NCBI RefSeq assembly: GCF_016433145.1
Contig: NC_058132.1
Span: 30,782,437 to 30,846,436, forward strand
DNA length: 64,000 bases
Origin: Gracilinanus agilis
Taxonomy: Eukaryota
Direction of reading: 5' to 3'
Positions within the stretch are counted from its first letter, which is position 1; each line of letters opens with the position of its first letter. A model generated the notes under the pieces. That model ran no database searches and was not told the origin of the DNA. It was given only the letters and a program-made list of their open reading frames with translations. A program made the translations under genes and the position numbers. Below, one piece after another: positions 6,201 through 36,700 of this stretch.

Positions 6201-9200
6201 CTCAGGAGAGGCTTCTCCATAGGAGGAAGCTGGAGGCTCTACCAGGTGGCTGACAGAGGAGAGCATTCCCGATATGGACAACAGTCTGTCAGAGGGTATG
6301 GAGGCTGGAGACGGAACAGCTACTAGTCAGCCTCCCACCCCGACCCCCAGACTAAAGTCTCTGTTTATATGGAGGATGGGACTGGAGCAGGGGGATGGAC
6401 AGAATGACCTCGTGCTATCTGGAAACAGTTACTGAACGGAGTGGGGCTGGGGGGAGACAAGGTGGCTGGGGCTTTTGCTGATCCCTGTGGACACAGATTG
6501 TCCGAAAGCCTCCAAACCTAGGGCAGATGGATGAATGGACCCCGCTACGGTGCAAGCTTCCTCTAGTTCTGGGGACCGTCCAGCCCACAGGTGCGCTGGG
6601 TCACAGGGCTCAGAGCTGGCAGGGACTTTAGAGACCGACTGTGGGGCCCAGAGGCCTCGTTTAACAGAGGAGGAAACTAAGGCCCATGCTGAGAAGTGCC
6701 AGAACTAAGTGGTTAGGAGCAGGGCCAAGATTCCCACCTGGGGCTTCTGAGTATTCCAGCTTTGGGTTCTGTCTGTGCTGCCTCACTGGGCCCCATCCAG
6801 TGGAGGGCACAGGGAAAGGAGTCCGTGCGGCCCCTGCCTCACCCGCATCCCATCCATCCCAGAGGGCTGCAGAGCGGCTGAACTCCATCACACCGGTCAA
6901 GTTCAGCATCTCCAGCCGAACGGACGCCGGCGTCCATGCCCTCGAGAACTCTGCCCATTGCGATGTTCAGCGCCTGACGGGCCGGCCCCCCTTCTCACCC
7001 GATGTCCTCACGACAGCCCTCAATAGCCACCTCGATCACCCTGACATCAGGTATGGAGAAGCCCCCAGATCCTTCCGGCACAGCCCCTCTCCTCTGTAGT
7101 GAATGGCCAGACCACCCTCCGTCAGGCCCCAGACATTCCTCGAGCACAATCCTGTCCCAGGTTCCATTGCCCTCCCCCCACCTTGGTCCCCCGTGACGGA
7201 ACACTCTGGGGGGGGGCCAGGCATCCTTGGTGTCAGCCCCAAGAGTTGGGGCACCCTGTACATCTCAGCCTCTCACGGCCCTGCCTTAGAAAGGACTCCT
7301 CCTGGAAGCGAGGATCAGCACCAAGGGGAGCGGACAGCGGAGAGGAGCCGGAGCTGGCCCACCTTAGGGAGTGCCTGCAGTGGGAGGCAGGAGGTAGACC
7401 GGCTGGCCTCCGGGTGGGTCACAGTTCCGGTCTGTCTGCGCTGCTCTAAGGCTTATGGTTATTTCTGGCTCTGGGAGGGACAGGAAGTAGCCTCTTCCCA
7501 GCCCAGGATTTGACCTTGGCCTGGGGCACTGGGGACCAGAACCAGGAGATCCTGGGCCCCAGCTGACTCCACCGGTGTCCAGGCTCTGTTCTGAGCCCTG
7601 CCGCCTCTTTCTATATATACTCTCTGGTCATGACCTCATCAGCTTCTAAATGTTCATCTCTAAGCGGATTCCCAGACCTGCCGGGCGAGGCTTAGCCAGG
7701 CTTTCTCCTGAGCTATAATCCTCTCCTCCGGATATCCTGTGGGCATCTCAAACTCACCGAAATGTCCTTTTCCCGAAACATTTCCCCATTATGGCGAAGG
7801 CACCGTCATCCTTCCCAGTCAGCCAGGTGACGCTCCCAGTGTCGGTGCCATTATTGACTTCCTCATTCAGTCTGTGGTTACGTCTTGTCACCTTTGCTCC
7901 ATCAGATCTCTCCCTCTGACACGGCCTGACCCTCCGCCTCAGCATCTCGTGCCAATGGTGGGCTTCTCTGCCTTCAGTCTCTCCCCACTCCACTCCAACC
8001 TTCGAGCAGTCATTACATACGCTCACATTTATTTTGATTATTATTATTTTTTAAACCATTACCTTCTTAGAATCAATACTGGGTGTTGGTGTCAAGGCAG
8101 AAGAGTGGTAAGGACTAGACAATAGGAGTTAAGTGACTTGCCCAGGGTCACATAGCTAGGGACTATCTGAGGCCAGATTTGACCTCAGGACCTCCTGTCT
8201 CTAGGCCTGGCTCTCAATCCACTGAAGCCCGACCTTTTTACACAAAAATATTTTATTTTTTAGCCAATTACGTGTAAAAATAATTTTTAACATTTTAAAA
8301 AAAGTTTGGGGTTCCAGATTCTCTCTGTCCCTCCCACCCTCCCTCTCTCCCACCCTTCTCCCCTCCCTGAAACATTTATTAAGTTCCAGCTGCCAACAGA
8401 TCTAACTGCGTTGCCCCCCTCCTCATAAAACTCCAGGGGCTCCCTGTCATCTCCAGAGTCTGAAAGAAACTGCTGGTTAAGGCCTCTCCCACCTGGCTCC
8501 CGCCACTTTCCAAAGCGACTGGATCTGTGATATCATTCATATAGGGAACTTGTGGGTGAGGACATTCCCTCCGCCAATGCAGGCTGGCACTTCCTCTGCA
8601 ATTCATAGTGTTAGAGGTGGGGATTGGCCCTGGGACTGGTCTAAGGAACTTCCAGTGAAGACACTCTCTACTGCTCGCCTGGCTGGTCACCACCTTCTCT
8701 GTGGCTTACAGCATGAGGTTCGAGCACCCGGGCCAGCACGTGGCCCACAATGGAGCCCAAACCATGCTTACTTAACAACATAAATGAGACAAAGATAATA
8801 ACACATTTTAAAACTAAGACTATACGTAGTCTCTGGACCCCTTGCATACCGATTTGTGGCCCCCATTTCTATTGGAGTTTGACACCATTGTTCTAGAAGT
8901 ACTAAGAATATGTGTCAAAGGTGAAATTTGAACCCAGGTCCTCCTGACTTCCAGGTCTGACACTCTCTCCATGTTTTTTGTTTTTTTTTTTAAAAATCCT
9001 TACCTTCCATCTTGGAGTCAGTACTGTGTATTGGCTCCAAGGCAGAAGAATGGTAAGGGCTAGGCAATGGGGGTCAAGTGACTTGCCCAGGGTCACACAG
9101 CTGGGAAGTGTCTGAGGCCAGATTTGAACCTAGGACCTCCTGTCTCTAGGTCTGGCTCTCCATCCCCTGAGCTACCCAGCTGCCCCCCTCCATTGTTTTT

Positions 9201-12200: not shown

Positions 12201-13828
12201 CTTGCCAGCCATTGAGGGGCAGGTGCCCCGGGGGCGCCGGGCTCCGGGCCCTCGTCCATCTTCCTTTGGGAGTCTTCTCCCCAAAGAAGGGGAGGAACAC
12301 TCATGGCAGGTGGCAGGACTGTGCCTGGCACGACCGACCCGCTGCCCAACCTGGAGGGGCCCCCGAGGCCTTGTATTAAGCACCTCCTGTGTACCGGGCA
12401 TCGGGTCAGCTCCCTCGCCACCATCCAGGCTTTCCTAATGGCCGCCATGGGGTATTCCGTGGCCTGGCCCGAGCCCCTTCCCCATCTCCCTCGGGATTGG
12501 AGATCTTAAAGCCGCCAGGTGGGGCAGTGCGCAGAGCCCCTGGCACTCCCTCAGCTGTGACCCTGGGCACGGCCCCTCCTTCCAGGAGTGCTTGTGGGCC
12601 CCTGGGCCAGGCACGTTTATGGAGCGGCCACTTCCAGTTACTGCACGCAGATCATGATCCCCTTTTACAGAGGAGGAAACCCAGATGAATAAGCCGGGGG
12701 TCACACAGAAATAAGTGCCTGAGGCTGGACTTGAACCCTGGCCCCAGGCTGGCTGCCTCAGCCGGCGAGATCATTCCCAGCTTTGAATCTCTGTGCCTGG
12801 GATCTTTCTCAAGGCCTCGCCCCCCCCCCCCCATTTCAAAGATGAAGAAACTGAGAAACTGAGGCCCCGGAAGGGAGGCCACGTCTAGGATTGGAACCAG
12901 GGTTTGGGCCCGCCCTGGCAGCGCTCTCTCCATCTGGCCGGAAAGGCGGGCCTTGAAGAAAGGCCGGAGCAGGGCGGGGCGGGGGATGCCGCCCCCCTCC
13001 CCCCCTCGCATCAGCCCTTTGTATTTGCAGGAAGCTGCAGTTTTGGGACCTGGAGTTTGAGAGCAAGTCCTTCCTGTACAAACAGGTACAGCGCGCGGCG
13101 GCGGCCCATTTTCCAGGCTGGAAGGTGGAGGCTGGGGGGAGAGGCAAGGATTACCGAACCACCCCCACCCCCGGCCGCTTTGGCTGGGGAACCCCGGAGA
13201 GCCTCGCGGGGGCTCGCGGCGCCCCCTGGTGGTGATGAGCGAGCAGGCTGCGCCGGGGGTCGTGCGGCTCCCTCCGTGCTTCCTCCATGGGGGGGCTCCG
13301 CTGCGCTGAGGCGGAGGGGGGCCGCGTCGCCCCCGGGCGGGAGGGGGCTGGGCGGTTGACCGCTTGGGGGCTGCGGCAGGTGCGGAGGATGACGGCGTGC
13401 CTGGTGGCCGTGGGCCTGGGGGCCTCGACGCCGCGGCAGGTGAAGGAGAAGCTGGAGAGTGGGGACCCCGGGAGAGGCCCCGGCCTCCTGGTGGCCCCCG
13501 CGCAGGGCCTGTTCCTCAAGACCGTGCAGTACGCCGGCCTCGGTGAGCGCCCCCTCCCCGGGCTCTGGGACCCCAAACCCGCGGGGGGACGGGGCGGAGC
13601 CGACAAAAGGCGCTTTCAGTGCGGCGGGGCGGGGGAAGGGGGCAGGATGTGAACAGGCGCCGAAGGGCGGCCAGGTGCCGGGGGCCACAGGGAGCCCATT
13701 TTCTCCCCTCACATCCGGGGCTCCGCCTTCCCTCCCCAGACTGGGCCCCCGGTGAGGCTTGCTACAATCGCCCGTCTGTCTCCGGAGGCCGGAGCCCAGG
13801 ACACGTGCCAGAAGGGCCTGAGCTCTGA
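237..13828 (+). CDS. PUSL1: tRNA pseudouridine synthase-like 1 (TruA family), spliced CDS
   Basis: join(237-295, 6061-6118, 6863-7050, 9778-9924, 10148-10321, 13031-13085, 13380-13542, 13740-13828?). Phases chain in frame (933 nt, 310 aa). TruA motifs RYLVFFQYVGT, SRTDAGVHA (catalytic Asp), FHARF, HDFRAF, SFLYKQVRRM, APAQGLFL. Last exon uncertain. Confidence 0.92.
3096..3305 (+). mobile_element. tRNA-derived marsupial SINE (SINE1_Mdo-like) with long A tail
   Basis: GGCAGCTGGGTGGCTCA head, GGTTCAAAT B box, GTGACCCTGGGCAAGTCACTT core, A tail. Confidence 0.85.
3612..3845 (-). mobile_element. MAR1-type SINE (similar copies at ~2520-2645 and ~62355-62580)
   Basis: TTTTCTTGGCAAAGATACTAGAGTGGTTTGCCA..TTTGACAGATGAGGAAACTGAGG signature. 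Confidence 0.7.
4395..4592 (+). mobile_element. SINE1-like element with 14-bp TSD
   Basis: AAAATCCTTGGTGG at 4381-4394 and 4593-4606. Confidence 0.9.
5891..6066. other. Assembly gap (176 N)
   Basis: Run of N. Confidence 1.
6061..6118 (+). CDS. PUSL1: PUSL1 exon 2 (..MAIKRPGQRVGVQNFLE); first ~6 nt in N gap
   Basis: VGVQNFLE motif, GAG|GTAAGT donor; start inferred from phase and expected 58-nt length. Confidence 0.8.
6863..7050 (+). CDS. PUSL1: PUSL1 exon 3 (RAAERLN..SRTDAGVHA..HPDIR)
   Basis: CCCAG| acceptor, CAG|GTATGG donor, catalytic motif. Confidence 0.95.
8045..9187 (-). mobile_element. Two antisense SINE1-like copies (~8045-8225, ~8985-9187) around L2/MIR remnants
   Basis: Reverse-complement SINE consensus. 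Confidence 0.75.
9778..9924 (+). CDS. PUSL1: PUSL1 exon 4 (VIRAFRAPDDFHARF..CWPLRA)
   Basis: CTTCTAG| acceptor, GA|GTAAGT donor. Confidence 0.95.
10148..10321 (+). CDS. PUSL1: PUSL1 exon 5 (HLDVAAMQEAA..HDFRAF..QEK)
   Basis: CCCTAG| acceptor, AG|GTAAGA donor. Confidence 0.93.
13031..13085 (+). CDS. PUSL1: PUSL1 exon 6 (KLQFWDLEFESKSFLYKQ)
   Basis: TTTGCAG| acceptor, CAG|GTACAG donor. Confidence 0.93.
13380..13542 (+). CDS. PUSL1: PUSL1 exon 7 (VRRMTACLVAVG..APAQGLFLKTVQY)
   Basis: GGCAG| acceptor, G|GTGAGC donor, TruA C-terminal motifs. Confidence 0.92.
13740..13828 (+). CDS. PUSL1: Candidate PUSL1 terminal exon (DWAPGEACYNRPSVSGGRSPGHVPEGPEL*)
   Basis: Nearest strong acceptor CCTTCCCTCCCCAG|; alternative acceptors at 13914 and 14093; tail not recognisably conserved. 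Confidence 0.4.
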
Positions 13829-14105
13829 CTGGGTCCAAGAAGGGAAACCGAGCGGATCGGAGCCCCCCCAGCCCCCGGGTACGCCCACACGCCCTCAGCC
13901 CCCTCCCTGACAGGCACCCCGGGGCCCCAGGCTGTTAGGATGCTTCCTGGGGGGCGGGGGCACGTCACTGCTCGAGGTTGAAGCTTCCTGTGGTTCAGGG
14001 GTGCTGGCAGAGCCCATGGGGGAGGGGGCGCAGGCTCCAGGCCCAGGGTCCCCCTCACGTAAGGCAGTCCAAACCCAGGTTGTCTTCAACAGGTCCCGCC
14101 TGCCC

Positions 14106-15125
14106 ATGGCCCTGAATGACACGGGAAGCGCCTTGTCGGCCGAGCTCCAGGGCCACCGTCTGTTGGCTGTGGCTTATGGCGTGGTCTTTGCAGTGGGCCT
14201 GGCTGAGAACGTGGCGGCCGGGAGCCTCCTCCTGGCCAGGCTGCGCCGCTCCAGCCCCTCTGCTGTGCTCCTGCTGAGCATGACCGCAGGCGGTGCCACC
14301 TTCGCGGGCGCCCTGCCCCTGAGGGTCCACTACCATCTGTGTGGGGGCGACTGGCGCTTTGGGGAGCTGGCGTGCCGGCTGAGCGGCGGCCTCTACTGGG
14401 CCTTCACCTTCCTCAGCGCCGCCTCTCTCTTCTGCCTCTGCCTGGACTGCCACCTGGCCCTGGCACACCCCTTCAGCCGCCTGCGCCTGCGCCGGGGCCA
14501 CTGGGCTGCGGGGAGCCTGCTGCTGTGGGGGCTGGCCGTGAGCGTGGCCACCCCCCTGGCCCCGCCAGCCCCCCTGAGTCGGACTGGCCCCAACAACCGC
14601 ACCTGGTGCTTGGAGACTCCTGCGGAGGAGGCGGGGTCCAGGCCTCACGGCGCCTATGCCCAGGTGGTGGGCCTCCTGGCGCCATGTGCCCTCGTCCTGG
14701 GGGGCTGCCCGCTGCTGGCCTGGCGCATGGCCTCTGGCCGCAGGACGCGACGCTGCCGGAGGGCCCTCAGGACCCTCTGCTTCAGCATGCTGGTGTGCGC
14801 ACTCTGCTTCCTGCCCTTCGCCCTCACCCGCCTGCTGCCCCGCTTCAGCCGCCTCGGCTACCTGCGCCCGGCGGTGCTGCTGCTGGTCAGCCTGGGCTCC
14901 TGCCTCAGCCCCCTCCTCGGCCTTCCCTGGCTGTGTCGGGCTGGCCGCAGGTTCTGGGCTCGCCTCTGCCCCTTCAGACCCAAGATATACACCATCTACG
15001 ACGGCAGGCTGGGCAGGAGCGGCCAGCTGGGGAACGCTGGAGAGAGCCAGGCTGGAGGAGCAGGCCTGTGTCCCCAGGAGGCCCCCCCGGACCCTCTATC
15101 ACCTACAGGAGCTCAGGACACATGA
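14106..15125 (+). CDS. Intronless class A (rhodopsin-like) GPCR, P2Y/LPAR6-like orphan, 339 aa (369 aa if ATG 14016 is used)
   Basis: Seven hydrophobic segments. N-glycosylation sequon NDT at the N-terminus, TM1 GLAEN, TM2 LP (P2.58), ECL1 WRFGELAC, post-TM3 HP, TM4 W, ECL2 Cys (TWCLE), TM6 CFLPF, TM7 SCLSP. Acceptor TTGTCTTCAACAG| at 14092 just upstream; AATAAA at 15262. Confidence 0.85.
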   Translation: MALNDTGSALSAELQGHRLLAVAYGVVFAVGLAENVAAGSLLLARLRRSSPSAVLLLSMTAGGATFAGALPLRVHYHLCGGDWRFGELACRLSGGLYWAFTFLSAASLFCLCLDCHLALAHPFSRLRLRRGHWAAGSLLLWGLAVSVATPLAPPAPLSRTGPNNRTWCLETPAEEAGSRPHGAYAQVVGLLAPCALVLGGCPLLAWRMASGRRTRRCRRALRTLCFSMLVCALCFLPFALTRLLPRFSRLGYLRPAVLLLVSLGSCLSPLLGLPWLCRAGRRFWARLCPFRPKIYTIYDGRLGRSGQLGNAGESQAGGAGLCPQEAPPDPLSPTGAQDT

Positions 15126-15261
15126 AAGCGCCCCTCCTGAGGGCCGCTGACCACGGGGGCCATCCCTGGGGCCCTCATCAGCTGCACCAGCCCCCCAGGC
15201 CCTGCCCCTCCTGTCTGGGGCTCAAACCTGGCTTGAAGGCCCTGAGGAGCTACAGCAGACC

Positions 15262-15267
15262 AATAAA
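15262..15267 (+). terminator. Poly(A) signal AATAAA for the GPCR (and likely PUSL1)
   Basis: Canonical hexamer 137 nt after the GPCR stop; T-rich sequence downstream. Confidence 0.7.
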
Positions 15268-15312
15268 AGGTCCAGAAGGAGGACACCAAGGCTGCTGGGT
15301 GGCTTTTGGTTT

Positions 15313-15318
15313 TTTAAT
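15313..15318 (-). terminator. Poly(A) signal ATTAAA for INTS11
   Basis: TTTAAT on + strand, ~325 nt past the INTS11 stop. Confidence 0.6.
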
Positions 15319-15641
15319 TTTCGTCCTTAAAAGGCAGGCTCCGGTGGCTGAGCCTCATTCTAGGCACTTGAAGGAGAGGGGAGTTGGAGCCGGCACCCCA
15401 AACCCCAGGCCCTGACTGCCCTCCTGGAGCTTCTCGACTGGTTGAGGAGACAGAGTCAGCTTCAGATTCCCACCAGGCAGAAGGGAGGTCGGGGCGGCAA
15501 GCCTGGGATGCCAGTGCGGATACAGGGAATCCGCCGGGCGGCGGCAGAGCCTCAGAGCGGGGGCGGCGTTGCTGCTCCTTCCCCACAAAGCGCATCTAAA
15601 GGGTCTTAGGAGACGGCCCAGAGCAGCTCCCAGGTGGGCCC

Positions 15642-15707
15642 TCAGCTGGGGGCCTGCGGGAGCCCCTTCTTCAGCAGCGACGTGAGGTAGCTGCCCAGCT
15701 CTTCATC
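15642..15707 (-). CDS. INTS11: INTS11 coding exon 17 ([21 protein letters not shown])
   Basis: Acceptor, in-frame TGA at 15642-15644. Confidence 0.95.
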   Translation of the reverse strand, partial: DEELGSYLTSLLKKGLPQAPS

Positions 15708-18700
15708 CTGCGACCGAGACAGAGGAGGAGGCTCATCCTCTGACCAGACCTGTGGCCTACGGCTTCCAGGAGGGTCCACAAGGGCTGGACAGAAGACTGT
15801 GGCCATTTCAACCCTGAGCCAACCAGAAATGGGGGAGGAGGCGGGTGCCCCATGGGAGCAAACGCCTAGGCAGGGGGGCCTCTCACCTGGTAGGTCCAGG
15901 AGACCAGGAGCACTTTGGTGCCTGGGTCCTCCGAGTGGGCAGTGGCCTGGATCAGGATGGACTCCACCATGACTGAGCCATCAGGCAGGTGCTGGACCGA
16001 ATGAGCTTTCAGAATGCTAAGAAGAGGACAGATGGACATGGCTGCCAGACCTGCCCCCCAGTGACCCCTGCGCCCTGGCCTGAGGGGAGAGAGCTCTGTG
16101 GGCTCTGTGCATCAGGGGCTTCCCTAAAGCCACAGTCCAGGAGAGCCCTGAGCGCTGGCTGAGCCGCCCAAAGGCAGCTGCAGTTTCCCAGGTGTTGGGG
16201 GAGGGCACCCCTTCCTCCTCACCTCTTCAGGTGACTGTAGACACGCAGCACCGTCTCCTGCTCCTTGCGTGTGTCATGGATGTGCACTCGGCAGGTGAAG
16301 CGAAGCTGGTGTTCAGCCAGGCCCAGCTCCTTGAGGGCCTGCTCGGAGGACACCAGCCGGAAATTCTGGCAGAGTAGAGGAAAGGAGTGTCACGGCCAGC
16401 CCCTGGCCCATGTGTGTAAAGGTTAGTCACTGTCGCAGTTGTGGGAAAGGCCCAAGTGACCCACGGTAAGCTGGGCACCATCCGTCACCCCCAAAGCCAG
16501 ACCAGGAGCGGCTCAAGTGAGCCCCACTGACCCAAGGAACTCCAGGACTCACACCCAGCCTCAGTTTCCCCCCATGTCCATGCTGCCGGGCACCTCAAGA
16601 GAAGGCCCAGGCCAGTGATGAGCAGAAGGGAGGAGAGTCAGAAGGCCTCCCCGGAGCCTGGGCCACTCACATTGTCCTTCATGATGAGAGTGCCATGCAT
16701 GAGCTTGGGCTTCTTTGCATCAGGGAGCAGGCCTGGTGGGGAGAGGAGGAAGAGACCTGTCATGCAGACTCCCTGGCGCCCCTCATCTCCATCCCCCTTC
16801 TCGGCCTCCCTCCCACACCTTGTGCCTGTCCACATAAGACACCATACCCAGGGCCATCTCTCTCTTCAGCAGCCCCAGCGAGATGCCCACAGGGATGTTG
16901 GGGTGGGTGAGTAGGGTGACCGTCTCTCCATTGGCCGGCATGTAGCAGTTCACATCTGCCAAAGGCATGACATCACAGGATTAAAACCAAACGGGGGCAA
17001 CCACAGGTGACCCAGATTCTTAGAGTTGCTCAGGTGGGCCCAGGCTTCCTCAGCTCTTCCACCCTGCCAACGCTGATTAGACAAATGCCAATGCAGGCAA
17101 AGCCCTGGGCCAGGTGCTGGAAATACACAGACAAAACCAAAACCAGCTTCCACTCTCGAGGAGGCCCCGGGCCTGCCACCACCACTGTCTGCAGCGAGCC
17201 TTCCCAGACCCCAGGCAGCATCTGTGCCAACTTCCCACAGACCATTTACTTCTAAAAGCCCATCCCCCAGCAGAGCCCCCTGCTCTGAGGTTTGCTCATG
17301 CAAGTCTTGGCCATCCCCGTCCTGGGGAAGCTTCACCCCAACCACTGCTCCCTGTCCATGATCTAACAGGCTCCACCAGGAGGCCTGGTAGGGCCAGTCT
17401 GAGGGGTCCCAAGAGGATTTCCACCCTTATCTCCACCCAACGCCAGGCCCACATACGGAATTCCTGTTCAATCTTCTGCTTTAGGAACTCCATCTTCTTG
17501 GCTTCCCCGTGGACAAGCAGCACGTTGTCTGGCTCAGCCTGGCGGACCAGCTGCATGATGCCCTTGGCATCGGCATGGGCACTGAAGGACATGTACTCCA
17601 CTTGCATCTTCACCTCTAGCTGAGGACAGATGGAAGAGAGTCACACACACAGAGAAGGCGGCAAGTGGGCAGGCAGAAAGGCAGATAGACAGGCAGAGAA
17701 ACAGACAGAAAGATATGCGAAGACAGACAAGACAGAGAAGCAGAGACAGACAAAAGGGCAGGCAGGCAGAGAAGTAGACAGGAAGGAAGACAAGAAGACA
17801 GAAGCAGAAAGACAGGCAGACTTATCACTGATCAATGTGGCTCTATCAGCACTGAATATTCAGGTGCACCACAGGTCTTTGGCCCATAAATAGCTCTCAG
17901 GACATCACAGAAGCACCTTCCATAGTTACAATCAGAGTAAAACTAAATTTCATCTGCCTTCTTACAGAGCCAAGAATATTTTAACTCTCTAAACTTCATT
18001 TGAAATCTTTCTTAAAAACCCTTACTTTCAGTAGCTGGGTGGCTCAGTGGATTCAGAGCCAGGCCTAGGAAAGGGAGGTCCTGGTTCAAATGTGGCCTCA
18101 GATACTTCCTAGCTGGGTGACCCTGGGCAAGTCACTTCACCCCATCGTCCAGCCCTTACCAACCTTCTGCCTTGGAACCAAAACAGTATTGATTCTAAGA
18201 GAGAGGGTCAACCAGCTAGGAAGTGTCTGAGGCCAATTTGAAGCCAGGACCTCCCATCTCTAGGCCTGGCCCTTTATCCACGGAGCCACCCAGCTGCCTC
18301 TGTCTTTTCCTTTGGATGGAGTTAAAAGCTGCCTCCTTGGAGGCAAACCCTGTGGAATTGCCCTTTAAGCTCAGTAGTCTTCTTGCCTTGGGGCCACGGC
18401 TTTTGTTGAATGCAAACATTTAACTTGGAGAGGAGAGGATAAGTCTATCATCGGTCCAGCACTCTGTGCCACACATCGCCTTTGTCCCTCTCACATCTTG
18501 TCTATCTCTTCTCTTCACAATGACAGCCTATTAAATGCCAATGTTTGCTGCAAGGATGCATTCATGAAGTCTTGTTGTATTTATGTAAACAGAGGACAGT
18601 GTTGGGATGAGGTCATGAGATCCACAAGTCTTCAATCCTGTGATCAGTGCTGTTGCTGTTTCTGACTCCATCCCTCCCAAAGACTTCCTGTCATACCTGT

Positions 18701-21700
18701 TAAGTGTCTACAATGGCGTTAAAGTCACCCAGAATCACAACTTGTCCTCTTTCAGCACATTAGTGAGGGTCTCCAAATTTTCATAAAATTTGCCCTCATC
18801 AGTCTGTCATGGTGGGGGCATACACACTGAGGGCGATGGCATAGCACTTTTCCTTCAAGTGACAATCACACTGTCCCGAGCCTGTTGTTCACTCCTTTGG
18901 GAGGCATGCAAGCTGGCTGCCTAAATTAGATTGGATTGCAAAACTTATGCCAGTTTTACAGCGCTCATTATGGGGCCATTCCAGAAAAGTGTGCCTCCAG
19001 ATCTGACTTGGGTCATCTGGCCTTCATTTGCCAGCCTTGTTTCCCCCAGGGCTGCTATTTGGGAGTGAGACCTGCTGAGTTCTCTCTCAATAAAGAGCTA
19101 TTCATCTCTCATGTCTACTGGATTTCATCTTCTCCTTAAGTGCGCACATCCCATGTGTCAATGAGGAGTGAAATCCTCTTCACATAAAGTTTTGTATATT
19201 TGTTATGTTTTGACCACAAGGTAGGATCCCCGCCCGCTGTGGTAAGCAGGTTAGGTGAAGCAGACAATATTTAAGGCATCTTTTCTAGCTCCTTTCCCTT
19301 GCCAAGACATGAGCAATGCTGCCCAAAGCACCCAGTGGGGCTGCTGAATCCTGGCTGCTCTAGCCCAGTGAGATGACTCTATGCCCAGGGCCAGGCTGCA
19401 TGCCGCATGTGCCTACAGTTCTGGTATGTCTGCATCTACTGCTTCATCACTTACCCATCACCACAGGACGTGGAGGTAGGCAAAAAGAGTAACTAAATAA
19501 AATAATACAACAATAAAATGAAATCGTAAAATGGCATGATGTCTTCTGACTCATGTAAATTGGATGTAAGTGAGGCAGGAGTGAGAAATCGTTAGCCTCG
19601 TTCTCTCTTCCAGTTAACAGTTAAATAGCAAAGGAAAAATGAAGCCTGGCGATGGCCCGGGATGCAGGGGAGGACCTTGGCATCGTCGATGGCTGACCGA
19701 GCTCTAAGTACTCCAAGCGCCTGCTTCTGCCGCCCTCAGGCACAGCAGAACGAATTGCTCCCGTCCGCCTATTCCACTGGAAAAGTCTTCACGTGCTTGG
19801 GGCAGTCACTTCCCCTAAGTGACCGAAGGGTCTGAGGCCTGTTGGGTACCCTCAACCTGGTCTGGCCTTCGGGCCAGGGTGTGGCCGCTGCACAGGCTAG
19901 TCTCTTGGAGCCACAGGCGGACACCGAGGCGGATAAGCAGCCCTCCCGCCACGGCTTAGTCCTTCCCAGATCTGCATGTCAGCCTTGTGCAGGGGCCGTG
20001 CTAATCTCGTCTATCATTCCAAGACAAACAGACAGGCACCATTCATCACCAATGACAGCTGCCACTTGCTGCCAACCCCCATCTCCACCCTCACACCCCC
20101 ATAGTTAAATTGAGTGAGTAAAGCAGTGATGGGCAAACTTTTTAAAGAGGGGCCAAAGGAAAGGGCTCCTCTGTCAGTCTGTTTCTAAGGCAACTCTTTC
20201 CAAGTTTCATTGTACTGTATCCTACTCATTGTATTCGTCAGATTAGGAAGAATGTGGTGGGGTGGGAGAGAACATTTCAGGGGCCACATCTGGCCTGGGG
20301 GCCGTAGTCACTGGTACAGGAGCTAAGAGCACAGGACTTGGGAAACGGGAAGACTCAGGGTATCGGCTCAAGTCTTGCCTCATCCCTTCATCTGTAAAAT
20401 GGAGACAGACAGCACCTATCATGGGACGACTGAGTTCACGCAAGACAGAGCAAACCTGAAGTGTTGGCTACGTTAACACCAGCCGTCCCCCTCCTCTGCC
20501 TTAGTAATAGGCTCCAGGCTTCAAGAGAACAACCTTCCCCCAACACACACCCCCTCCTGCCCCAAGCCCCTCGCCCAGCTCCAGGAAGGGCTCCGAGGGG
20601 GCAGGATTGTGGCCACAAGGCCACCTTCAGCCTTGCTGGAGGACAGCCCGGTGACCTCTGGGGCTCTTGTGGAGCCCCCTAGAAATGGAAGGGCCACCCC
20701 AGGAAGCTCCAGGCTCTAGCTCTAGGTTTGCTTCTAGGGAGAGGATTCCCAGCGCAGCCCCTGGGGACCCATGGAGGGGGGAGATGGGTGCCTGTAGGCC
20801 CCGCAGCCGCCGCTACTCGTAAATACACAATGAGCCTCCTGCCGACCACAGGAAGCACTCGGGATGACGTATGGACTGTCTGCAAAGATCAATCAAAGGC
20901 AGCCCCGAGCTACAGGACAGGAAGTGGATGGGGCAGAGGAAAAGCCTGGAGCCACTGGGCCCACTGAGGAAGCAGTCTTCTCTCAGCGGGTACAAACAAG
21001 GGAATTGGGATGTGCCCCTTCAGTCATCAATTATGCCACCCAATTGGGAATGGCCCTGGGTCTGGTCCTGCCAGGCCAGCAGGGCCCATCTGGGCTGCCC
21101 CTGCTCCTGCCTTCAGGCACTCGGACCCTGGCCCTCCTACATTTGCAGGTTTTTGACCAGCCCCAACCAAAGACGTGGGCTCAGACCCCAAACCTGCTAC
21201 CATTCCTTCCGCCAGATGGGAATGATCCTGGAATCCTGGCTCTGACCCTTCCTTGGCTACCAAAGTCAAGTGCTTTGCCCGCCCAAGTCACACGTGTGCA
21301 ACAGTGGGATGATTTCAGACCAAGTCCTGTAGCCGTAGCTGGTCCACTGGGGTAGGGAAGGCCAAGGAGGCCAAGTGACTTGATCCCAGGACACCCAGGT
21401 GGGATGCGAACTCAACCCACTGACTGGAGGCAGGCCTCCTCCCGGGGTCCCCTCCAGCAGGGAAACTGCCAGGCAGAATGCTTTGAAAACTGAGGATAAG
21501 CTGGATGGGGCCTAAGAGGGCACTGGGTCTGGCCCCCATTTTACAGCTATCAGTAGTTGAGGGAGAATTTGAACCTAAGTGTCTGATTCCAAATCACCAA
21601 CATCTGCTATTTGCACTCTAGCCCATGAGGGAGCCTGAGCAGCAGGCGCTGAGGCCCTGTGGCAGCTCGACGTCAGGACAGGTGGAAGGTTGAGCCATCA

Positions 21701-24700
21701 GGAGGGTGCCAGGGCCTACACTGAGGACACTCAGGTTCCTCCTAAGACAGCCCTCCCACCCCACCCCACCGAGCCCCAAAGGGACTTACAATCTGCCTCC
21801 CTTCCATCTCCAGCTTCCGCTGTCCACTCAGGATCTTGTGGCCCACAGTTCCCTGTACACAGTAGCCTGGCATGATGACCTGGGGGCCAGAAACTGGGCG
21901 GTGAGACACACAAGCAAGGTTCCATCCAGGCCAAACAGTACACTTTCATGTTAAGACTACACACAGCATTGCTGGGCAGGCTCTGAGATGTCCCAAGGCC
22001 AAGTAACAAGGACTTTGGGATCATCTGCCATTTGGAGCCCCCCCACCCCGTGAAGGGCAAGCAGGAACAGTGGCTAAGGAGCCCTGAGCACCAGGCTCCC
22101 AGCAGAACCTGTCAGAGCTCTGCAGGGCTCCTGGCACAATGAACAGAGCTCTAAGGGAGGCAAGTAGTGAGATCTCCCCCTCTCCTCCCTGGAAGAGAGC
22201 TCAGCTTGGGGGCCAAGGGAGCACCATATGGCTCTAGGCTTAGGCTCTAAGCCAGGACAAAACTGAGGAGAAAGGAGCAATCTTCAGGCCAACCCCGCTG
22301 TCCCCCAGACAAAGAGGAACAGCTGGCCCCAAGGCCTCTCCTCCACATCCTGCATGGAAGAGGAGCCACTGACAGCTCAAAGTGCCCCAGACAGCTGTGC
22401 CTGCCCCGCCCTTTAATTCTCCCTTCAGTGACCAGGATGACCAAGGGAGTACAGCCGCTGTCCCGTGACCCAGGAGCTAGCCTGGGTCACCACCAAATGA
22501 CAATGGCACCCTTACCATGTTCTTCTCATTCCCAGCCCATTTCCGGAAGATCTGCAGGGACTGTCCTGCATGCAGCATCCCTGGGGTGGCAAAGACAACC
22601 TTGGTGGAGAGAGGAGGAGAAGTGGTGATCAGAGGAACCCCAAAGACTGACCACGGGAAGCCGCAGGCAGAGAGACAGAGGGCCGAAGCCCAGTGCGTTT
22701 TCCAGTTTGTCCCAACAATTCTGATCTTCCTGGGCTGGCCAGGCCTCGGTCATACTGCCAAGCAGCCAGAGCCCCTCACCTCCTTCCCCTTTAAACTCGG
22801 GGGCCAGATACTTAAACATCCTCCCCAGATCCCGGCAGCTCCCCTCCCGTGAGAGAGCAAACATCAGACCCGACTATATAAAATCCAGAAAGGGGCCTTC
22901 GCCTCATGCCCAGAGAAGGAAATGAGGTTTGGACATGTGCCCAGAGATGGATTTTCCCACCGCCGTTCTCTTTCTAGGCCAGTTTCTGATTGCGCTTCCT
23001 CTGGGAGTACTAGAGGCCGAGGCTCTCAACCTACTCCTGCCTCCCCCTGCTGCAGGCACTCCTGTGAATGCATCCCAGTGTGGGCAGCGGTCTGGGCAGA
23101 AGCCCCAGCTGACCCCTGCCCTGCCCTACCATGGGTCCAGGGTTATCCGCAAAAGCTCGGTCAAAAGCCTTGATATGTTTGAACTCAAACATGTTTCTCT
23201 GCACAAATGTTTTCCGGATCTTCTGATTGGTCCAGGTGATGAAGAGCTTATAGTAGTGATTGGCCTTCTCGGTCAAGCCCGTGGAGAAGTAGATGGGGGC
23301 CTTCAGGTTCATTCGCTCCCTTGGGGAAGAGAAAGGGGAGGCAGTCAGTGCCAGCCAGTGGCTGTTGAGCCTGGCCTCCACACAAGGCCACCCAAGAAGC
23401 TTTCATCTCCTGGAGGCCCGGGCCTACCTTGGGGATGGGGGGAGGTCATCCAGGCACTAAACGGGGCCCGAGACAGCCAGCTCACAAACTTAAGTCTTGT
23501 CTGGTCTGAACTATTCAATGAATTTCGAATGAAATGGTGAGCTCTTGTGCTCCCAGCTTCTCCCGTCCACCATAAGCAGAGCCCCGAAGTGAAATCGGAT
23601 TCTATTCTGCCCAAGGTCATGTCACATTCTTAAAGCCTGGCATTGTGTCAGGCTTGCACTCGCTGCCAGGGAACTCTTAGAAATCACTGCCGTAGGGGCA
23701 GTTAGGTGGTTCAATGGACATAAAGGACCAGGCCTAGAGACGGGAGGTCCTAGGTTCAAATCTGACCTCAGACACTTCCCAGCTGTGTGACCTTGGGCAA
23801 GTCACTTGACTCCCACTGCATGGCCCTTAATGCTCTTCTGCCTTGGAACTGATACTTAGTATTGATTCTAAGACAGAAAATAAGGATTTTTTTAATAGAA
23901 AGAAATCATTGCCAGGCAGAGATTTTGGCTGTGAGGGCACCAGTCTTCAAGGAATTTCTTTTTTACATATACAAAAACATGCAAAGAAAGGATAGAAACA
24001 CTCCAAGGAGACACCGTTTTCTAGACACAGATAGAGCACCCCTCTCCCCACCACAAAATCCCCAAGCTATGCTTCTTAGGATAAGCCAGAGTCAGTGGTT
24101 TTCTTACCAAAATGTTTCCAACAGAATGCAGAGCTCCTGAGCCCGGCCCAGAGCAAACACTGGGATGAGAACCTGCAGAGGGAAGGCCCAGGGCCCAGAA
24201 GCATCAATCTGGAGTAGTTTCATTCATTCCCTTTCCCGTGACGGTCCATTCCTCTCCATCCCACCCCACCCGTGCTTCAAGGAAAAGTTCCATCCCAAAA
24301 AAGGAGAGTAATGAGTCTGTGGACATCCCCAAGTCTGTCTGCTTGTGTGGACGCTGCCTAGGAAGCCAAGCTCCACTAAGGCAAGAACTCTCCCGGAGCA
24401 GCTGCCTTGCTGACTAGGTTTCACACATGCATAGTTCTGAAGAACCAGTTTCATTTCCTGGAACACCAACTTGTCTCAGAGGATGCCCTCAGTTTGCTTT
24501 CTAATTCAGTGACAGGATAAGAATGTGCTGCAGGGGAAAGGAGGCTGGACTGGGAGTCCTGGCTTTTGAACTCATGGTCTATGCAATCCCTTCTGGTTCC
24601 AAGTCCTTTGGTGCTGCTTAAAAGGACATCAGAGGATAGCTAGGTGGCTCAGTACTTAAGAGCACCAGGCCTAGAGTTAGGAGTTCCTGGGTTCAAACCT

Positions 24701-33700: not shown

Positions 33701-36700
33701 CTTTTCTCCAGACCTCCTGCTCCAGGGTAGGGGCTCGTGGATCATGTGGGCTGCTCCTACTACATGACTGTCCTGCCAATTTCTCTAGTCCTATTCTTTC
33801 TGCTACACCCACCCTGAGTCTTCCTGTGACCCTTAGGGTGCCCACAGCTTTCATTCTCCAAAGAACATGGTATTCCAAAGCCCTGTAGCCATACAGTCAT
33901 CGATCTCCTTCCTCTGTGATCTGCACTCTTATTCCACCTCAGCATACACAAGGAGTCCCATCACCCCATCCCTAGACATCCCTTTCCAAACTCCACCCCT
34001 GGATGGCTCTCCCCATGGACCTCTTCCCCTCTGCTCACATGTGGCTGCACACCTCTGGAGAACATCCCACAAACATCCTTTCACTGTTCCCTGGTCAATT
34101 CCCTACAGAGGTGATAAAAGAGCATTTCCCAAGTACTGGTTCCAAATCTTCCCTCCCCCTATGCAGAAGACCATGCCTCATACTCCATCAAAAAAAGTAA
34201 AATTGTTCTAAGTGTCTTCCTCCCCGAGTCATTTCTGCTCTTCCAGTCATTGTGACACCATCTGCCCCACATCACCCTCTTCTTTGCTCCAGTCTCAGAA
34301 AACAAAGCACTCTTTCTCCTTGCCAAAGCCAATCCCTTTGCTTGGGCCCTGAATTTCCTCTCTCCCGGAACCCAATTTTCCTCCAAGAAATTGCCTTTTC
34401 AAAGATTTCATCTCTCCCTAATTTTATTTCTTTTTTAAAAATGTTTTTGTTTCTCATGTCATCATAGTGTCTCATGTATCCCTCTCCTTTCCTTCCCTTT
34501 GAGTCATTCCATATAAAAAATAATCTTTTTTAGAGGGAACCCCCCACCCCACCCCAAACTGGTCAATACATTGAAAAAGTCCCAAAACATGGGGAATGAA
34601 CAACAATTGTAGATCTCCCATCTCCATGAAGGGGCAAGTTGGGGGAGACTTCTAATGGCTCTTCATTCAAATCCCTCTTGATCATTATGATTTTGTACAT
34701 TTGCTTTTGGCTTTTTGGTGTGCCACTATTCTTTCCATCTACATTACTACTGTTACTATATATATTGTTTTCTTGGCGCTGCCTCAGTTCACAGCCTTTT
34801 CCATGATTCTCTATACTCACATACCACCTTTCTTAGAGCACAGTAATATTCCATTACATTTATATACTGCAAATTGTTTAGCCATTACCCAACTGAACAA
34901 CTTTTTTGTTTTCAATTCTTCACTATCACAAAAAATATTACTATACCTATTTTGGAATACATGGGGGCTTTTTTCACATTAAAGGCTTCCCTGGGGTTTA
35001 AGATCAGTAAGGGAGTCTCTGTTCAAAGGATATGGTCACTTTATTTGCATAGTTCCAAATGGTTTTTCAAAATTATTCTATAACTTCAGAGCTCTACCAA
35101 CAATGTACTGGTGACTACTGTCATTTTTGCCATTTTGCAGGGAGTGAGGTAAAATTGCGGGGTTGTTTTGAACCACATTTCTTATTGTTATTGATTTAGA
35201 ACATTTTTTTCATGTGGCTGTGAATATTTTACAATTCTCCTTAGTTGTTCAAATCCTTTGATCATTTCTCTAAGGAATGGCTCTCAAGTCTATATATATT
35301 CATTGTTTATATATCCTGGATACCAGACCTATATCACAGAAATCTGACAAAGATTCTTTTCCCATCTGACCATTTCCCTTCTCATCTCAGATGCATTCAT
35401 GTGACCTGTGCAGAAACTTTTCAGGTTCAAGTAATCAAAGTTATCTATTTTACTTTTGGTAATTAGCTCTATCTTGTTTAAGAATATGTATATTTGGGGG
35501 CAGCTGGGTAGCTCAGTGGATTGAGAGCCAGGCCTAGAGACGGGAGGTCCTAGGTTCAAATCTGACCTCAGACACTTCCCAGCTGTGTGACCCTGGGCAA
35601 GTCACTTGACCCCCATTGCCTACCCTTACCTCTCTTCTGCCTTGGAGCCAATACATAGTATTGACTCCAAGACGGAAGGTATGGGTTTAAAAAAAAAAAA
35701 AAAAGAATATGTATATTTTTTTTAAAAAGAACATATCTATTACCCATAGCTCTGATCTGTTTCTCTTCTATTTTTTAATAGCATGATCTTTAACATAAAG
35801 GTCATATATCCATTTAGAATTGTGACATGTAGTCTAAAGTGTTGGTCAAAGCCTAATTTCTACCAGATTGCTTTCCAGTTTTCCCAGCAATTTTTATCAA
35901 ATAGGCAGTTTTTTCCTAGGTAACTTATGTTTCCCACTTTATCAAATACTGGGTAATTAAGCTCTATTTTTTCTGAATCGCCCTGGTCTAGCCTGTCCCA
36001 TTAATCTCTCTCTGTATTCTTTAACCAATACCAGATGGTTTTTTTTAATAACTGCTGCCTTATAGTATAGTTTGAGGTCTAGAAGTGCTATTCCCTTCAT
36101 TCTTCCTTCATCAATTCCCTTCATAGTCTGTATCTTTTGTTTCTCCAAATGAATTATTATTTTATCATGCTTATATGTAAAGTATCCCCTTGGTAAACTG
36201 ACTGATATAGCATTGAATTTTAATTAATGTTGGCAGTACTGTCATTTTTATCACATCAGTACGGCCTAGCCATGAGCACTGAATATTACTCCAATTACTT
36301 AGGTTGTTCTTTATTTCTTTAAGGAGCTCTTTGTAATTGAATCTATGCAGATCTTTTGTGTATTCTCGTATAGATATTTTATGCACTTTTATAGTTATTT
36401 GGAATGGAGTTTCCATTTCTATTATTGCTTCTTATATTGTTATTATATAGAAATAATGTTGATTTTTGAGGATTCATTTTGTAGCCTGCCAACTCTGCTG
36501 AAACTATTGTCTCAGCATCTATGCTGATTCTCAGGTTTTTCTAAATAAACCATATCAGCAAACAGGCACAGTTTTATCTCCCCTTTAGCTATCATTCTTT
36601 TAATTCCAATCTCTCATCTTATTGCTATTGTTAGCATTTTTAGAACTATATCAAATAAAAAGTGGGATGAGTAGGCATCCCTGCTTCACTTTTGTATTTC

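What the first reader, a model, noticed from the sequence alone, without database searches (positions are those of the whole stretch)
14292..14921. The GPCR has lost essentially every canonical activation microswitch yet keeps its fold
Seen: D2.50 to G (GGT, aa 63); DRY to DCH (GAC TGC CAC at 14445-14453, R3.50 to C explicable by one CpG transition); no Tyr near 5.58; N/DPxxY to SPLLG (14907-14921); a very short ECL3. Structural anchors N1.50, P2.58, C3.25, W4.50, ECL2 Cys, P6.50 and P7.50 are retained. Knowledge: R3.50, D2.50 and NPxxY are needed for G-protein coupling and sodium allostery, and atypical receptors such as ACKR1 lack them. Inference: either a non-signalling scavenger/decoy or dimer partner, or a gene caught mid-decay. 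High GC content delays stop codons, so an intact ORF alone is weak evidence of selection.
Basis: partly seen in the sequence, partly recalled or inferred. Interest (0 to 1): 0.7.

Follow-up and report, generated by a model that had tools for sequence, protein, structure and literature searches.

The report
Switch-less orphan GPCR kept in marsupials
An intact marsupial gene encodes a P2Y/LPAR6-like receptor that lost nearly all residues normally used to activate G proteins, yet selection has preserved it since before living marsupials diverged.

Summary
The intronless ORF 14106-15125 (+) is a class A receptor with D2.50>G, DRY>DCH, Y5.58>C, N7.45>G and NPxxY>SPLLG. All the structural anchors are kept.

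It is not a decaying gene. Five other marsupial proteins (~60-79% identical) share the loss of D2.50, R3.50, N7.45, N7.49 and Y7.53, so the losses predate the marsupial crown. Codon ML gives omega 0.35, and omega=1 is rejected (p~3e-15). On the window's own branch omega is 0.37 (omega=1 rejected, p~1e-4). Body indels are in frame. RNA-derived contigs cover 14319-15290 and end just after the only AATAAA.

The gene lies between PUSL1 and INTS11 in four marsupials and three birds, and next to INTS11 in a herring. It is therefore an old, unnamed vertebrate orphan, and no eutherian protein appeared among its close relatives. Non-passerine birds and fish keep every canonical motif (omega 0.20). Every oscine sampled lost R3.50 (omega 0.52).

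Constraint in marsupials is relaxed but real, and equal on the outer and inner halves. The best reading is a selectively kept atypical receptor. Whether it truly fails to signal through G proteins is untested.

The scan has two other first-stage notes on this same stretch and none on other DNA.

The parts
14106..15125 (+). Intronless coding sequence of the orphan class A receptor (339 codons plus TGA)
   Evidence: ORF list. Pfam 7tm_1 E 1.3e-21. Marsupial orthologues align from this ATG. Codon ML omega 0.35.
14016..14105 (+). Possible 30-codon N-terminal extension from an upstream in-frame ATG, used by the stored model P0001. Not conserved.
   Evidence: P0001 begins here. Nucleotide similarity to koala and dunnart starts only at 14101-14108.
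14115..14123 (+). N-terminal N-glycosylation sequon NDT, kept in all marsupial orthologues that cover the N-terminus (P0002 is a fragment that starts later)
   Evidence: Alignment A1.
14292..14294 (+). Position 2.50: GGT (Gly) where relatives have Asp (sodium-site Asp lost)
   Evidence: The other marsupials have S, T, T, A, A, all small residues.
14445..14453 (+). DRY motif replaced by DCH (GAC TGC CAC)
   Evidence: Australian marsupials have DSY. Non-passerine birds and fish have DRY.
14595..14609 (+). ECL2 sequon N-R-T and the conserved ECL2 Cys (C168), partner of C3.25 (C90)
   Evidence: Invariant columns in A1 and A3. Predicted as a beta hairpin.
14706..14708 (+). Position 5.58: TGC (Cys) where Australian marsupials, non-passerine birds and fish have Tyr. 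A change specific to the window's lineage.
14796..14812 (+). TM6 core: C6.44 (Phe in the paralogue group) through C6.47-F6.48-L-P6.50
   Evidence: C6.44 is shared by birds and marsupials.
14835..14861 (+). Short ECL3 (about 9 residues), with a 12-nt deletion relative to the other marsupials
   Evidence: Alignments. DNA gap of 12 nt. Helix ends in the model.
14895..14921 (+). TM7 inner half: N7.45>G (14895-14897) and N/DPxxY>SPLLG (14907-14921). P7.50 is kept.
14985..15005 (+). C-tail motif IYTIYDG, matching [VI][FY]TI[CY]D in birds. It is absent from the fish orthologue and the paralogues.
   Evidence: Alignment A3. Tail omega 0.15 over 16 alignable codons.
15262..15267 (+). AATAAA, the only canonical poly(A) signal on the + strand between 13500 and 15500
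   Evidence: RNA-derived contigs end at 15284 and 15290.
14319..15290 (.). Stretch covered by 100%-identical contigs from three small runs of one study. At least one run is RNA-derived. The strand is not shown by contigs.
   Evidence: table 8. The GT..AG joint 13541|13739 in run X2 shows it is RNA.
13739..13828 (+). Last coding exon of the upstream neighbour PUSL1 (stop at 13826-13828). The intron 13542-13738 is confirmed by a spliced contig.
   Evidence: PseudoU_synth_1 is the neighbour in the orthologous loci.
15313..17044 (-). 3' end and last exons of the downstream neighbour INTS11, convergent with the receptor
   Evidence: blastn blocks at 89-92% identity to dunnart, koala and bird. IntS11_C is the neighbour in the orthologous loci. 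ATTAAA on the - strand at 15313-15318.

Best explanation
This is a real, selectively maintained gene for an atypical class A receptor. It is the marsupial orthologue of an old, unnamed vertebrate orphan of the P2Y/LPAR6/CysLT/GPR17 cluster. That orphan sits beside INTS11 in a herring, and between PUSL1 and INTS11 in three birds and four marsupials.

The ancestral form was a canonical G-protein-coupled receptor. Fish and non-passerine birds still carry D2.50, DRY, Y5.58, N7.45 and N/DPxxY.

On the long stem leading to living marsupials it lost the sodium-site Asp, the DRY Arg, N7.45, N7.49 and Y7.53. It has since been kept as an intact, transcribed ORF under moderate purifying selection. The window's own lineage then also lost Y5.58 and Y3.51 and shortened ECL3.

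Inferred mechanism (not shown): the protein still folds as a 7TM bundle and still binds something at its conserved outer face (ECL1, the top of TM3, and the ECL2 hairpin with its disulfide). It no longer drives Galpha through the usual switch network. It would act through a non-canonical route, such as arrestin- or traffic-based ligand uptake, modulation of a partner receptor, or a fixed constitutive state. The inner face and a bird-shared C-tail motif remain under constraint, so it probably still has a cytoplasmic partner and is not a passive decoy.

How sure I am: functional, selected gene with ancient switch loss, about 0.85. No canonical G-protein activation, about 0.55.
For: Identity and fold:
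- Pfam 7tm_1.
- Best solved relatives are GPR17, P2Y2, GPR183, OXGR1 and GPR4/68.
- The AlphaFold model has pLDDT 84 and pTM 0.79, with 7 TM helices plus helix 8.
- Foldseek hits are PAR1, APJ, P2Y1/2/4 and GPR17 at TM 0.65-0.82.

Orthology:
- PUSL1-receptor-INTS11 order in Trichosurus, Vombatus, koala, Sminthopsis, Falcunculus and Chauna.
- INTS11 lies downstream of the receptor in Alca, Urocolius and Menura, fetched with 3-kb flanks.
- Receptor-INTS11-GLTP order in Alosa.
- In the tree, marsupials+birds get 98/95 support, with clupeid fish as sister at 99/96.

Ancient shared loss: all six marsupial sequences lack D2.50, R3.50, N7.45, N7.49 and Y7.53.

Selection:
- Omega is 0.35 (MG94) or 0.23 (GY94), with LRT against omega=1 of 62-107.
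- The window branch has omega 0.37, and omega=1 is rejected at p=1e-4.
- The outer half has omega 0.36 and the inner half 0.37, both below 1.
- Body indels are 3, 12, 3, 42 and 18 nt.
- A neutral copy would stay stop-free in only about 3-5% of cases per lineage.
- The immediate flanks do not align to koala or dunnart, while the CDS does.

Expression: identical contigs over 14319-15290 come from three samples, one of them shown to be spliced RNA. They end 17-23 nt after AATAAA.

Comparative contrast: canonical birds have omega 0.20, marsupials 0.35 and R3.50-less oscines 0.52, all below 1.
Against: - No functional assay exists. Loss of the microswitches predicts loss of canonical coupling but does not prove it.
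- Omega is higher than in the canonical bird orthologues (p=0.0026), and dN between marsupials is high (0.2-0.26), so constraint is weak for a receptor.
- The omega estimate depends on the method. NG86 gives 0.47-0.63, and noncoding divergence suggests ML dS may be inflated.
- The window branch is long and includes the stem, so a recent loss of constraint in this species alone cannot be excluded.
- The window also has extra changes: Y5.58C, Y3.51H, and deletions in ECL3 and the tail.
- The RNA evidence comes from contigs only. It shows no strand and no 5' end, there is no cover over 13958-14318, and all runs belong to one study. Antisense read-through from INTS11, or a PUSL1 3'UTR, could produce the same cover.
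- The AlphaFold fold is driven partly by canonical homologues in the alignment.
Confidence: 0.6

Rival explanations
1. The receptor still couples to G proteins, or is constitutively active, through a rewired interface. Loss of the sodium-site Asp and of the DRY ionic lock would free the bundle from negative allosteric control, and other residues would replace R3.50 and Y7.53 in contacting Galpha.
For: - The inner half of the protein is as constrained as the outer half (omega 0.37 against 0.36).
- The cytoplasmic end of TM6 (R-R-A-L-R-T-L) and P-L-L-A-W at the end of TM5 are invariant in marsupials and similar in birds.
- The residues replacing D2.50 are always small (G, S, T, A), which suggests a packing requirement and not free drift.
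Against: Established GPCR knowledge says R3.50, Y7.53, N7.49 and, in the window, Y5.58 are the residues that stabilise the active state and contact Galpha. All of them are gone together, with no obvious replacement nearby. Nothing here tests coupling.
Confidence: 0.2
2. In this particular species the gene is a young pseudogene or is drifting towards one. The signal of selection comes from the older part of its long branch and from the other marsupials.
For: - Changes specific to the window: Y5.58>C, Y3.51>H, a 12-nt ECL3 deletion, and 42- and 18-nt tail deletions.
- The window's terminal branch is 0.21, against 0.11 for its sister P0002.
- High GC lets ORFs survive. A 358-aa chance ORF lies in another frame, and 5% of simulated neutral copies stay stop-free.
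Against: - Omega=1 on the window branch is rejected (LRT 14.9).
- All deletions are in frame.
- The ORF, the start-codon context and the poly(A) signal are intact.
- The stretch is transcribed in three samples.
Confidence: 0.08
3. The stretch matters mainly as RNA, either as the 3'UTR of PUSL1 or as a convergent-transcription buffer against INTS11. On this reading the receptor ORF is not translated in this species.
For: - There is no AATAAA or ATTAAA on the + strand between the PUSL1 stop (13828) and 15262.
- A spliced PUSL1 contig runs past the stop to 13880.
- No contig shows a 5' end for the receptor.
Against: - Selection acts at the codon level in the receptor frame.
- Indels are in frame.
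- Conservation stops at the ORF borders.
- The same ORF is kept at the same locus from fish to birds.
Confidence: 0.07

Closest known systems
Atypical 'silent' 7TM receptors: ACKR1/DARC, ACKR2, C5aR2 (C5L2, DLC in place of DRY), CCRL2 (from my own knowledge of these receptors)
   Same: A class A fold with the DRY Arg missing or altered, conserved by selection, and expected not to activate G proteins in the usual way. This is what the marsupial receptor most plausibly works like.
   Different: - Those receptors belong to the chemokine/complement (gamma) branch and are not homologous in any close sense. Solved ACKR3 chains did match the fish orthologue P0011, but far down the list at E about 6e-32.
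- As far as I recall, they mostly keep D2.50 and NPxxY. Here D2.50, N7.45, N7.49 and Y7.53 are gone as well.
- Ligand, scavenging and arrestin use are unknown here.
P2Y / LPAR6 / CysLT / GPR17 / GPR4-68 cluster of class A (delta branch)
   Same: - Best sequence and fold matches.
- Intronless CDS.
- CFxP in TM6 with F6.48.
- C3.25-ECL2 disulfide and an ECL2 hairpin.
- Basic residues at 6.55 and 7.35.
   Different: - The window is only about 20-29% identical to any solved member.
- No single member stands out. The automated names of the orthologues disagree: GPR183-like, PAR4-like, GPR68-like, PAR2-like, LPAR6, P2Y2-like, GPR17-like.
- The canonical activation residues of the cluster are missing in marsupials.
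The same orthologue in non-passerine birds and clupeid fish (annotated 'LPAR6-like' or 'LPAR6')
   Same: - Same locus beside INTS11.
- Same clade.
- Birds share C6.44 and the C-tail motif with marsupials.
   Different: - They keep every canonical switch.
- They evolve under tighter constraint (omega 0.20).
- Their ECL3 is longer.
The same orthologue in oscine passerines
   Same: An independent loss of R3.50 (to L, V, A or Q), Y5.58 and N7.45, with intact ORFs in about 60 species and a relaxed but significant constraint (omega 0.52).
   Different: Oscines keep D2.50, and nearly all keep N7.49 and Y7.53. Marsupials lost those too.

Membership tests
Class A (rhodopsin-like) 7TM receptor | Match to the 7tm_1 profile above the curated cut-off | tested here: met
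   77.7 bits against a cut-off of 30.5, residues 38-270.
Class A (rhodopsin-like) 7TM receptor | Seven TM helices plus helix 8, with anchors N1.50, W4.50, the C3.25-ECL2 disulfide, P5.50, P6.50 and P7.50 | tested here: met
   AlphaFold model with pLDDT 84 and pTM 0.79. Anchors listed.
Class A (rhodopsin-like) 7TM receptor | Canonical activation switches: D2.50, D/E-R-Y, Y5.58, N/DPxxY | tested here: not met
   G, DCH, C and SPLLG respectively. These are typical of the class rather than defining, so membership of the fold class stands.
P2Y/LPAR6/CysLT/GPR17 (purinergic-like) cluster | Closest in sequence and fold to members of this cluster rather than to other class A branches | tested here: met
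   Top hits are GPR17, P2Y2, LPAR6, CysLT2, GPR4 and P2Y1.
LPAR6 proper (the name many database entries give the bird and fish orthologues) | Orthology to LPAR6 (one clear best match, same locus) | tested here: not met
   - The window ranks solved LPAR6 only at E about 4e-13, behind some 30 other receptors.
- For Chauna, LPAR6 (7e-53) barely leads CysLT2 (7e-49). For Alosa, GPR4 and P2Y1 lead.
- The locus is PUSL1-INTS11. From memory, this is not where LPAR6 lies.
LPAR6 proper | Activation by lysophosphatidic acid | not testable with these tools
Atypical/decoy 7TM receptors (a functional class) | DRY Arg missing or replaced | tested here: met
   C in the window and P0002, S in the four Australian species.
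Atypical/decoy 7TM receptors (a functional class) | Binds ligand without activating G proteins; scavenges or signals via arrestin | not testable with these tools
   Needs expression and BRET or uptake assays.
Atypical/decoy 7TM receptors (a functional class) | Maintained by purifying selection despite switch loss | tested here: met
   Omega 0.35, with omega=1 rejected.
Unitary pseudogene | Stops or frameshifts, omega near 1, no conservation beyond the flanks | tested here: not met
   Intact ORFs in six species. In-frame indels. Omega 0.35. The flanks are unalignable while the CDS aligns.

The most novel reading that the evidence does not exclude
One ancient vertebrate orphan receptor has been turned repeatedly and independently from a canonical GPCR into a switch-less atypical receptor. 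The change is complete in marsupials, partial in every oscine songbird sampled, and patchy in suboscines, and eutherians apparently discarded the gene altogether. That makes it a natural graded series for how a GPCR leaves G-protein signalling while keeping a selected function, such as ligand scavenging, arrestin-only signalling or partner modulation.
Probability: 0.35. Interest if true: 0.75.

Novelty: new variant of a known kind. Interest (0 to 1): 0.62.

Why it matters
Receptors that lack the DRY Arg are known. A receptor that has lost D2.50, R3.50, N7.45, N7.49 and Y7.53 together, and has then been conserved since before living marsupials diverged, is unusual.

The orthologue series makes the question testable. 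Fish and non-passerine birds are canonical, oscines lack R3.50, and marsupials lack every switch. Matched receptors can therefore be expressed side by side to ask which switches are needed for which output, and what function remains when all are gone.

The work also identifies an unnamed vertebrate receptor gene beside INTS11. No eutherian protein appeared among its close relatives, and its automated names (LPAR6, P2Y2-like, GPR183-like, PAR-like) are misleading.

Tried and rejected
- **DNA for more marsupials.** The marsupial codon analysis therefore rests on three species. P0002, the window's closest relative, exists only as a protein fragment of unknown species.
- **Turtle, catshark and newt 'LPAR6-like' proteins as orthologues.** I considered this and rejected it. 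They form the sister group to the fish+bird+marsupial clade. They also lack the tail motif and C6.44. The turtle and catshark loci show no neighbouring gene within 10 kb.
- **dN/dS methods.** Pairwise NG86, YN00 and ML estimates disagree, from 0.19 to 0.63. I therefore fitted my own MG94 and GY94 star-tree models and report the range. Bird-marsupial dS is saturated (above 3), so omega on the marsupial stem was not estimated.
- **RNA evidence.** No run is on record as RNA. The contigs laid down cannot give strand, 5' end or expression level.
- **Literature.** Three searches found nothing on this receptor. The library is partial, so this is weak evidence of novelty.
- **Not attempted.** I made no comparison with eutherian or human DNA. 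The absence of a eutherian orthologue rests on the profile search, where no eutherian appears among the hits below 1e-30, and on my memory of the human locus.
Full report
**1. What is at the coordinates.**

The finding lies inside a single uninterrupted ORF on the + strand (14001-15125). The conserved start is the ATG at 14106, which gives 339 codons. An upstream in-frame ATG at 14016, used by the stored model P0001, adds 30 non-conserved residues.

The protein matches Pfam 7tm_1 at 77.7 bits against a cut-off of 30.5. Its best solved relatives are GPR17, P2Y2, GPR183, OXGR1, GPR68/GPR4, CysLT2 and the PARs, but only at E 1e-21 to 1e-15. It is therefore a divergent member of the P2Y-like (delta) cluster.

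- GGT at 14292-14294, position 2.50.
- GAC TGC CAC at 14445-14453, DCH for DRY.
- AGC CCC CTC CTC GGC at 14907-14921, SPLLG for N/DPxxY.

The alignment to GPR17 and the 116-sequence table fix the numbering. They add three changes: Y5.58>C (14706-14708), N7.45>G (14895-14897) and F6.44>C (14796-14798).

The anchors N1.50, P2.58, C3.25, W4.50, the ECL2 Cys, P5.50, CFxP/P6.50 and P7.50 are all present. ECL3 is 4 residues shorter than in other marsupials and 12 shorter than in birds.

**2. Relatives and locus.**

The word search found only five other proteins, all marsupial: Trichosurus, Vombatus, Phascolarctos, Sminthopsis, and a fragment of unknown species. They are 60-79% identical to the window and carry four different automated names.

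In the four named marsupials the gene lies between a PseudoU_synth_1 gene (PUSL1, + strand) and an IntS11 gene (- strand).

A profile search of 1.84 billion representatives found only ten proteins below 1e-30. These are two marsupial, one bird, one turtle, two shark and one newt representative, plus three teleosts. None is eutherian.

The synteny holds outside marsupials:
- The bird proteins sit in the same PUSL1-receptor-INTS11 interval in Falcunculus and Chauna.
- With 3-kb flanks, INTS11 lies just downstream of the receptor in Alca, Urocolius and Menura.
- In the herring Alosa the gene lies tail to tail with INTS11, followed by a GLTP-domain gene.

A maximum-likelihood tree groups marsupials with birds at 98/95 support. 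Clupeid fish are the next sister at 99/96. The turtle, catshark and newt 'LPAR6-like' proteins fall in a separate sister group, so they are paralogues.

The receptor is thus an old vertebrate orphan with no settled name. Three literature searches found nothing on it.

From my own knowledge, PUSL1 and INTS11 are direct neighbours in human with no gene between them. I did not test this here.

**3. History of the switch residues.**

The table shows the following:
- All non-passerine birds but two (about 28 species), Acanthisitta, the two clupeids and the paralogues carry the full canonical set: N1.50, D2.50, D/ERY, Y5.58, N7.45 and N/DPxxY. The exceptions are Aegotheles (R3.50>H, N7.45>S) and Dryobates (Y5.58>F, N7.45>S).
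- All six marsupial sequences lack D2.50 (G, S, T, T, A, A), R3.50 (C, C, S, S, S, S), N7.45 (G or S), N7.49 (S) and Y7.53 (G or C).

Under parsimony these losses predate the split of the sampled marsupials.

Y5.58 and Y3.51 are kept in the four Australian species and changed only in the window (C, H) and its sister P0002 (F, H).

The marsupial stem is very long, 1.34 substitutions per site against 0.30 for the bird stem.

The codons show R3.50 as TGC in the window and AGC in koala and dunnart. Both are one step from the avian CGC/CGT and one step from each other.

The same orthologue has eroded in parallel in Passeriformes:
- Every oscine has L, V, A or Q at 3.50, F or L at 5.58 and S at 7.45. 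Nearly all also have W at 3.51.
- Suboscines are patchy. R3.50 becomes C, H or G; N7.49 becomes T, S or D; Y7.53 becomes C or S. Neopelma also has D2.50>G.

On a tree of 105 orthologues the minimum number of state changes is 6 for R3.50, 8 for Y7.53, 5 each for Y5.58, N7.45 and N/D7.49, and 2 for D2.50.

**4. Is it selected or decaying?**

The same stretch holds a 358-aa ORF in another frame and a 275-aa ORF on the other strand. Only 2.3% of point substitutions in this CDS create a stop. In a composition-preserving simulation, 5% of copies stay stop-free after 0.2 substitutions per site, and 2.6% after 0.3.

The cross-species evidence is nonetheless clear. I used three marsupial coding sequences: the window, koala (L001) and dunnart (L002).

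| Test | Result |
|---|---|
| MG94-F3x4 star-tree model | omega 0.35; LRT against omega=1 = 62, p~3e-15 |
| GY94-F3x4 star-tree model | omega 0.23; LRT = 107 |
| Branch-specific omegas (window / koala / dunnart) | 0.37 / 0.29 / 0.38; no heterogeneity |
| Omega=1 on the window branch | rejected, LRT 14.9, p=1e-4 |

Simple NG86 ratios are higher, at 0.47-0.63. Introns of the neighbouring genes align at 70-74% identity, which suggests that ML dS may be somewhat inflated. The true omega probably lies between 0.25 and 0.6.

Two further observations support constraint:
- Indels inside the body of the CDS are 3, 12, 3, 42 and 18 nt.
- The CDS aligns to koala and dunnart across 14101-15012, while the flanks 13833-14100 and 15013-15311 do not.

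Constraint is the same on the extracellular half (0.36) and the intracellular half (0.37). Both are significantly below 1.

| Group | Species | Omega |
|---|---|---|
| Canonical non-passerine birds | Chauna, Alca, Urocolius | 0.20 |
| Marsupials | window, koala, dunnart | 0.35 |
| Oscines | Falcunculus, Menura | 0.52 |

Marsupials differ from the non-passerine birds at p=0.0026. The oscine value is still below 1 (p=3e-4).

Loss of the switches therefore goes with partial relaxation, not with loss of constraint.

**5. Expression.**

No run is on record as RNA. However, three small runs from one study (80-100 million letters of contigs each) carry 100%-identical contigs over 14319-15284, 14344-15208 and 14325-15290.

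One of these runs also has a contig that joins 13541 to 13739 across a GT..AG interval of 197 nt. That interval is the last PUSL1 intron, so the material is RNA.

The contigs end 17-23 nt after the only canonical + strand poly(A) signal in 13500-15500, the AATAAA at 15262. Depth falls towards the 5' side, and nothing covers 13958-14318.

Contigs show no strand. An ATTAAA for INTS11 lies on the other strand at 15313-15318. There is no + strand signal between the PUSL1 stop (13826-13828) and the receptor.

An independent receptor mRNA, a long PUSL1 3'UTR and INTS11 read-through therefore cannot be told apart from these data. Transcription of the stretch is shown. The transcript's structure is not.

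**6. Fold.**

AlphaFold2 was run with a 90-row alignment. It gives pLDDT 84 and pTM 0.79, with seven helices, an ECL2 hairpin and helix 8. Foldseek returns PAR1, APJ, P2Y1/2/4, GPR4/65, P2RY8, OXGR1 and GPR17 at TM 0.65-0.82.

This fits 'keeps its fold'. It is weak evidence, because the alignment is dominated by canonical homologues.

**7. Reading.**

Shown:
- The gene is an orthologue of an old vertebrate orphan receptor.
- The switch losses are shared by all sampled marsupials and are ancient.
- The ORF is under moderate purifying selection, including on the window's branch.
- The stretch is transcribed.

Inferred from established GPCR knowledge: D2.50 forms the sodium site, R3.50 and Y7.53/Y5.58 stabilise the active state and contact Galpha, and N7.49 belongs to the water network. 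On that basis canonical G-protein activation is unlikely.

Three features argue for a remaining cytoplasmic partner rather than a passive decoy:
- The inner face is under equal constraint to the outer face.
- The TM5 and TM6 cytoplasmic ends are invariant.
- A C-tail motif, [VI][FY]TI[CY]D, is shared with birds.

The residues that replace D2.50 and N7.45 are always small (G, A, S, T). This hints at a packing constraint, perhaps a bundle fixed in one state. That idea is speculation.

The closest functional analogues are the atypical receptors ACKR1, ACKR2, C5aR2 and CCRL2. These are not close homologues.

**8. Verdict.**

The 'mid-decay' reading is rejected on present data. The 'atypical receptor' reading is supported as far as sequence can support it.

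Novelty: a new variant of a known kind. It is an unnamed orphan lineage with an unusually complete, ancient and conserved loss of activation switches, and with a parallel partial loss in songbirds.

The scan holds two other first-stage notes on this same stretch (s1-173139 and s1-173192). I know of none on other DNA.

Noticed in passing
L003:10001-11062, L009:3001-4044 and proteins P0176-P0236: In every oscine passerine sampled, the orthologous receptor has lost R3.50 (to L, V, A or Q), Y5.58 and N7.45, and in nearly all Y3.51 has become W. Suboscines show a patchwork of further losses, and Neopelma has D2.50>G, N7.49>T and Y7.53>C. This is parallel erosion of the same switches at the same locus as in marsupials.
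   Followed up: partly
window 14339-15415 (+) and 13011-13838 (-): Chance ORFs of 358 aa (another frame, overlapping the receptor) and 275 aa (opposite strand over the PUSL1 end). They show how easily long ORFs arise in this 67-71% GC stretch.
   Followed up: yes
window 13542-13738: A 197-nt GT..AG intron of PUSL1 is confirmed by a spliced contig in run X2. The PUSL1 stop is at 13826-13828, and the contig runs on to 13880.
   Followed up: partly
window 13829-15267: There is no AATAAA or ATTAAA on the + strand between the PUSL1 stop and the AATAAA at 15262, downstream of the receptor. PUSL1 and the receptor may therefore share a 3' end. This is unresolved.
   Followed up: partly
window 15262-15318: Convergent poly(A) signals lie about 50 nt apart: AATAAA (+) at 15262 and ATTAAA (-) at 15313-15318 for INTS11. 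The two transcripts' 3' ends must abut or overlap.
   Followed up: no
window, e.g. 9078-9184, 41539-41645, 51075-51183, 59867-59966, 35499-35605: A dispersed repeat of about 100 nt, present in more than 25 copies on both strands of the window, also matches koala (L001:6831-6942, 19903-20007) and dunnart (L002:3118-3158, 6818-6941). It is probably a marsupial-wide SINE.
   Followed up: no
proteins P0156, P0009, P0012 (L004): Turtles, catsharks and newts carry a canonical paralogue (F6.44, DRY or ERY, DPxxY, a second N-terminus-ECL3 Cys pair) that forms the sister group to the INTS11-adjacent receptor. Its locus has no neighbouring gene within 10 kb.
   Followed up: partly
window 16661-31730: INTS11 exons are 88-92% identical to dunnart and 79-89% identical to a songbird. 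The receptor is 76% identical and the last exons of PUSL1 75-81%. This gives a useful local scale of constraint.
   Followed up: no
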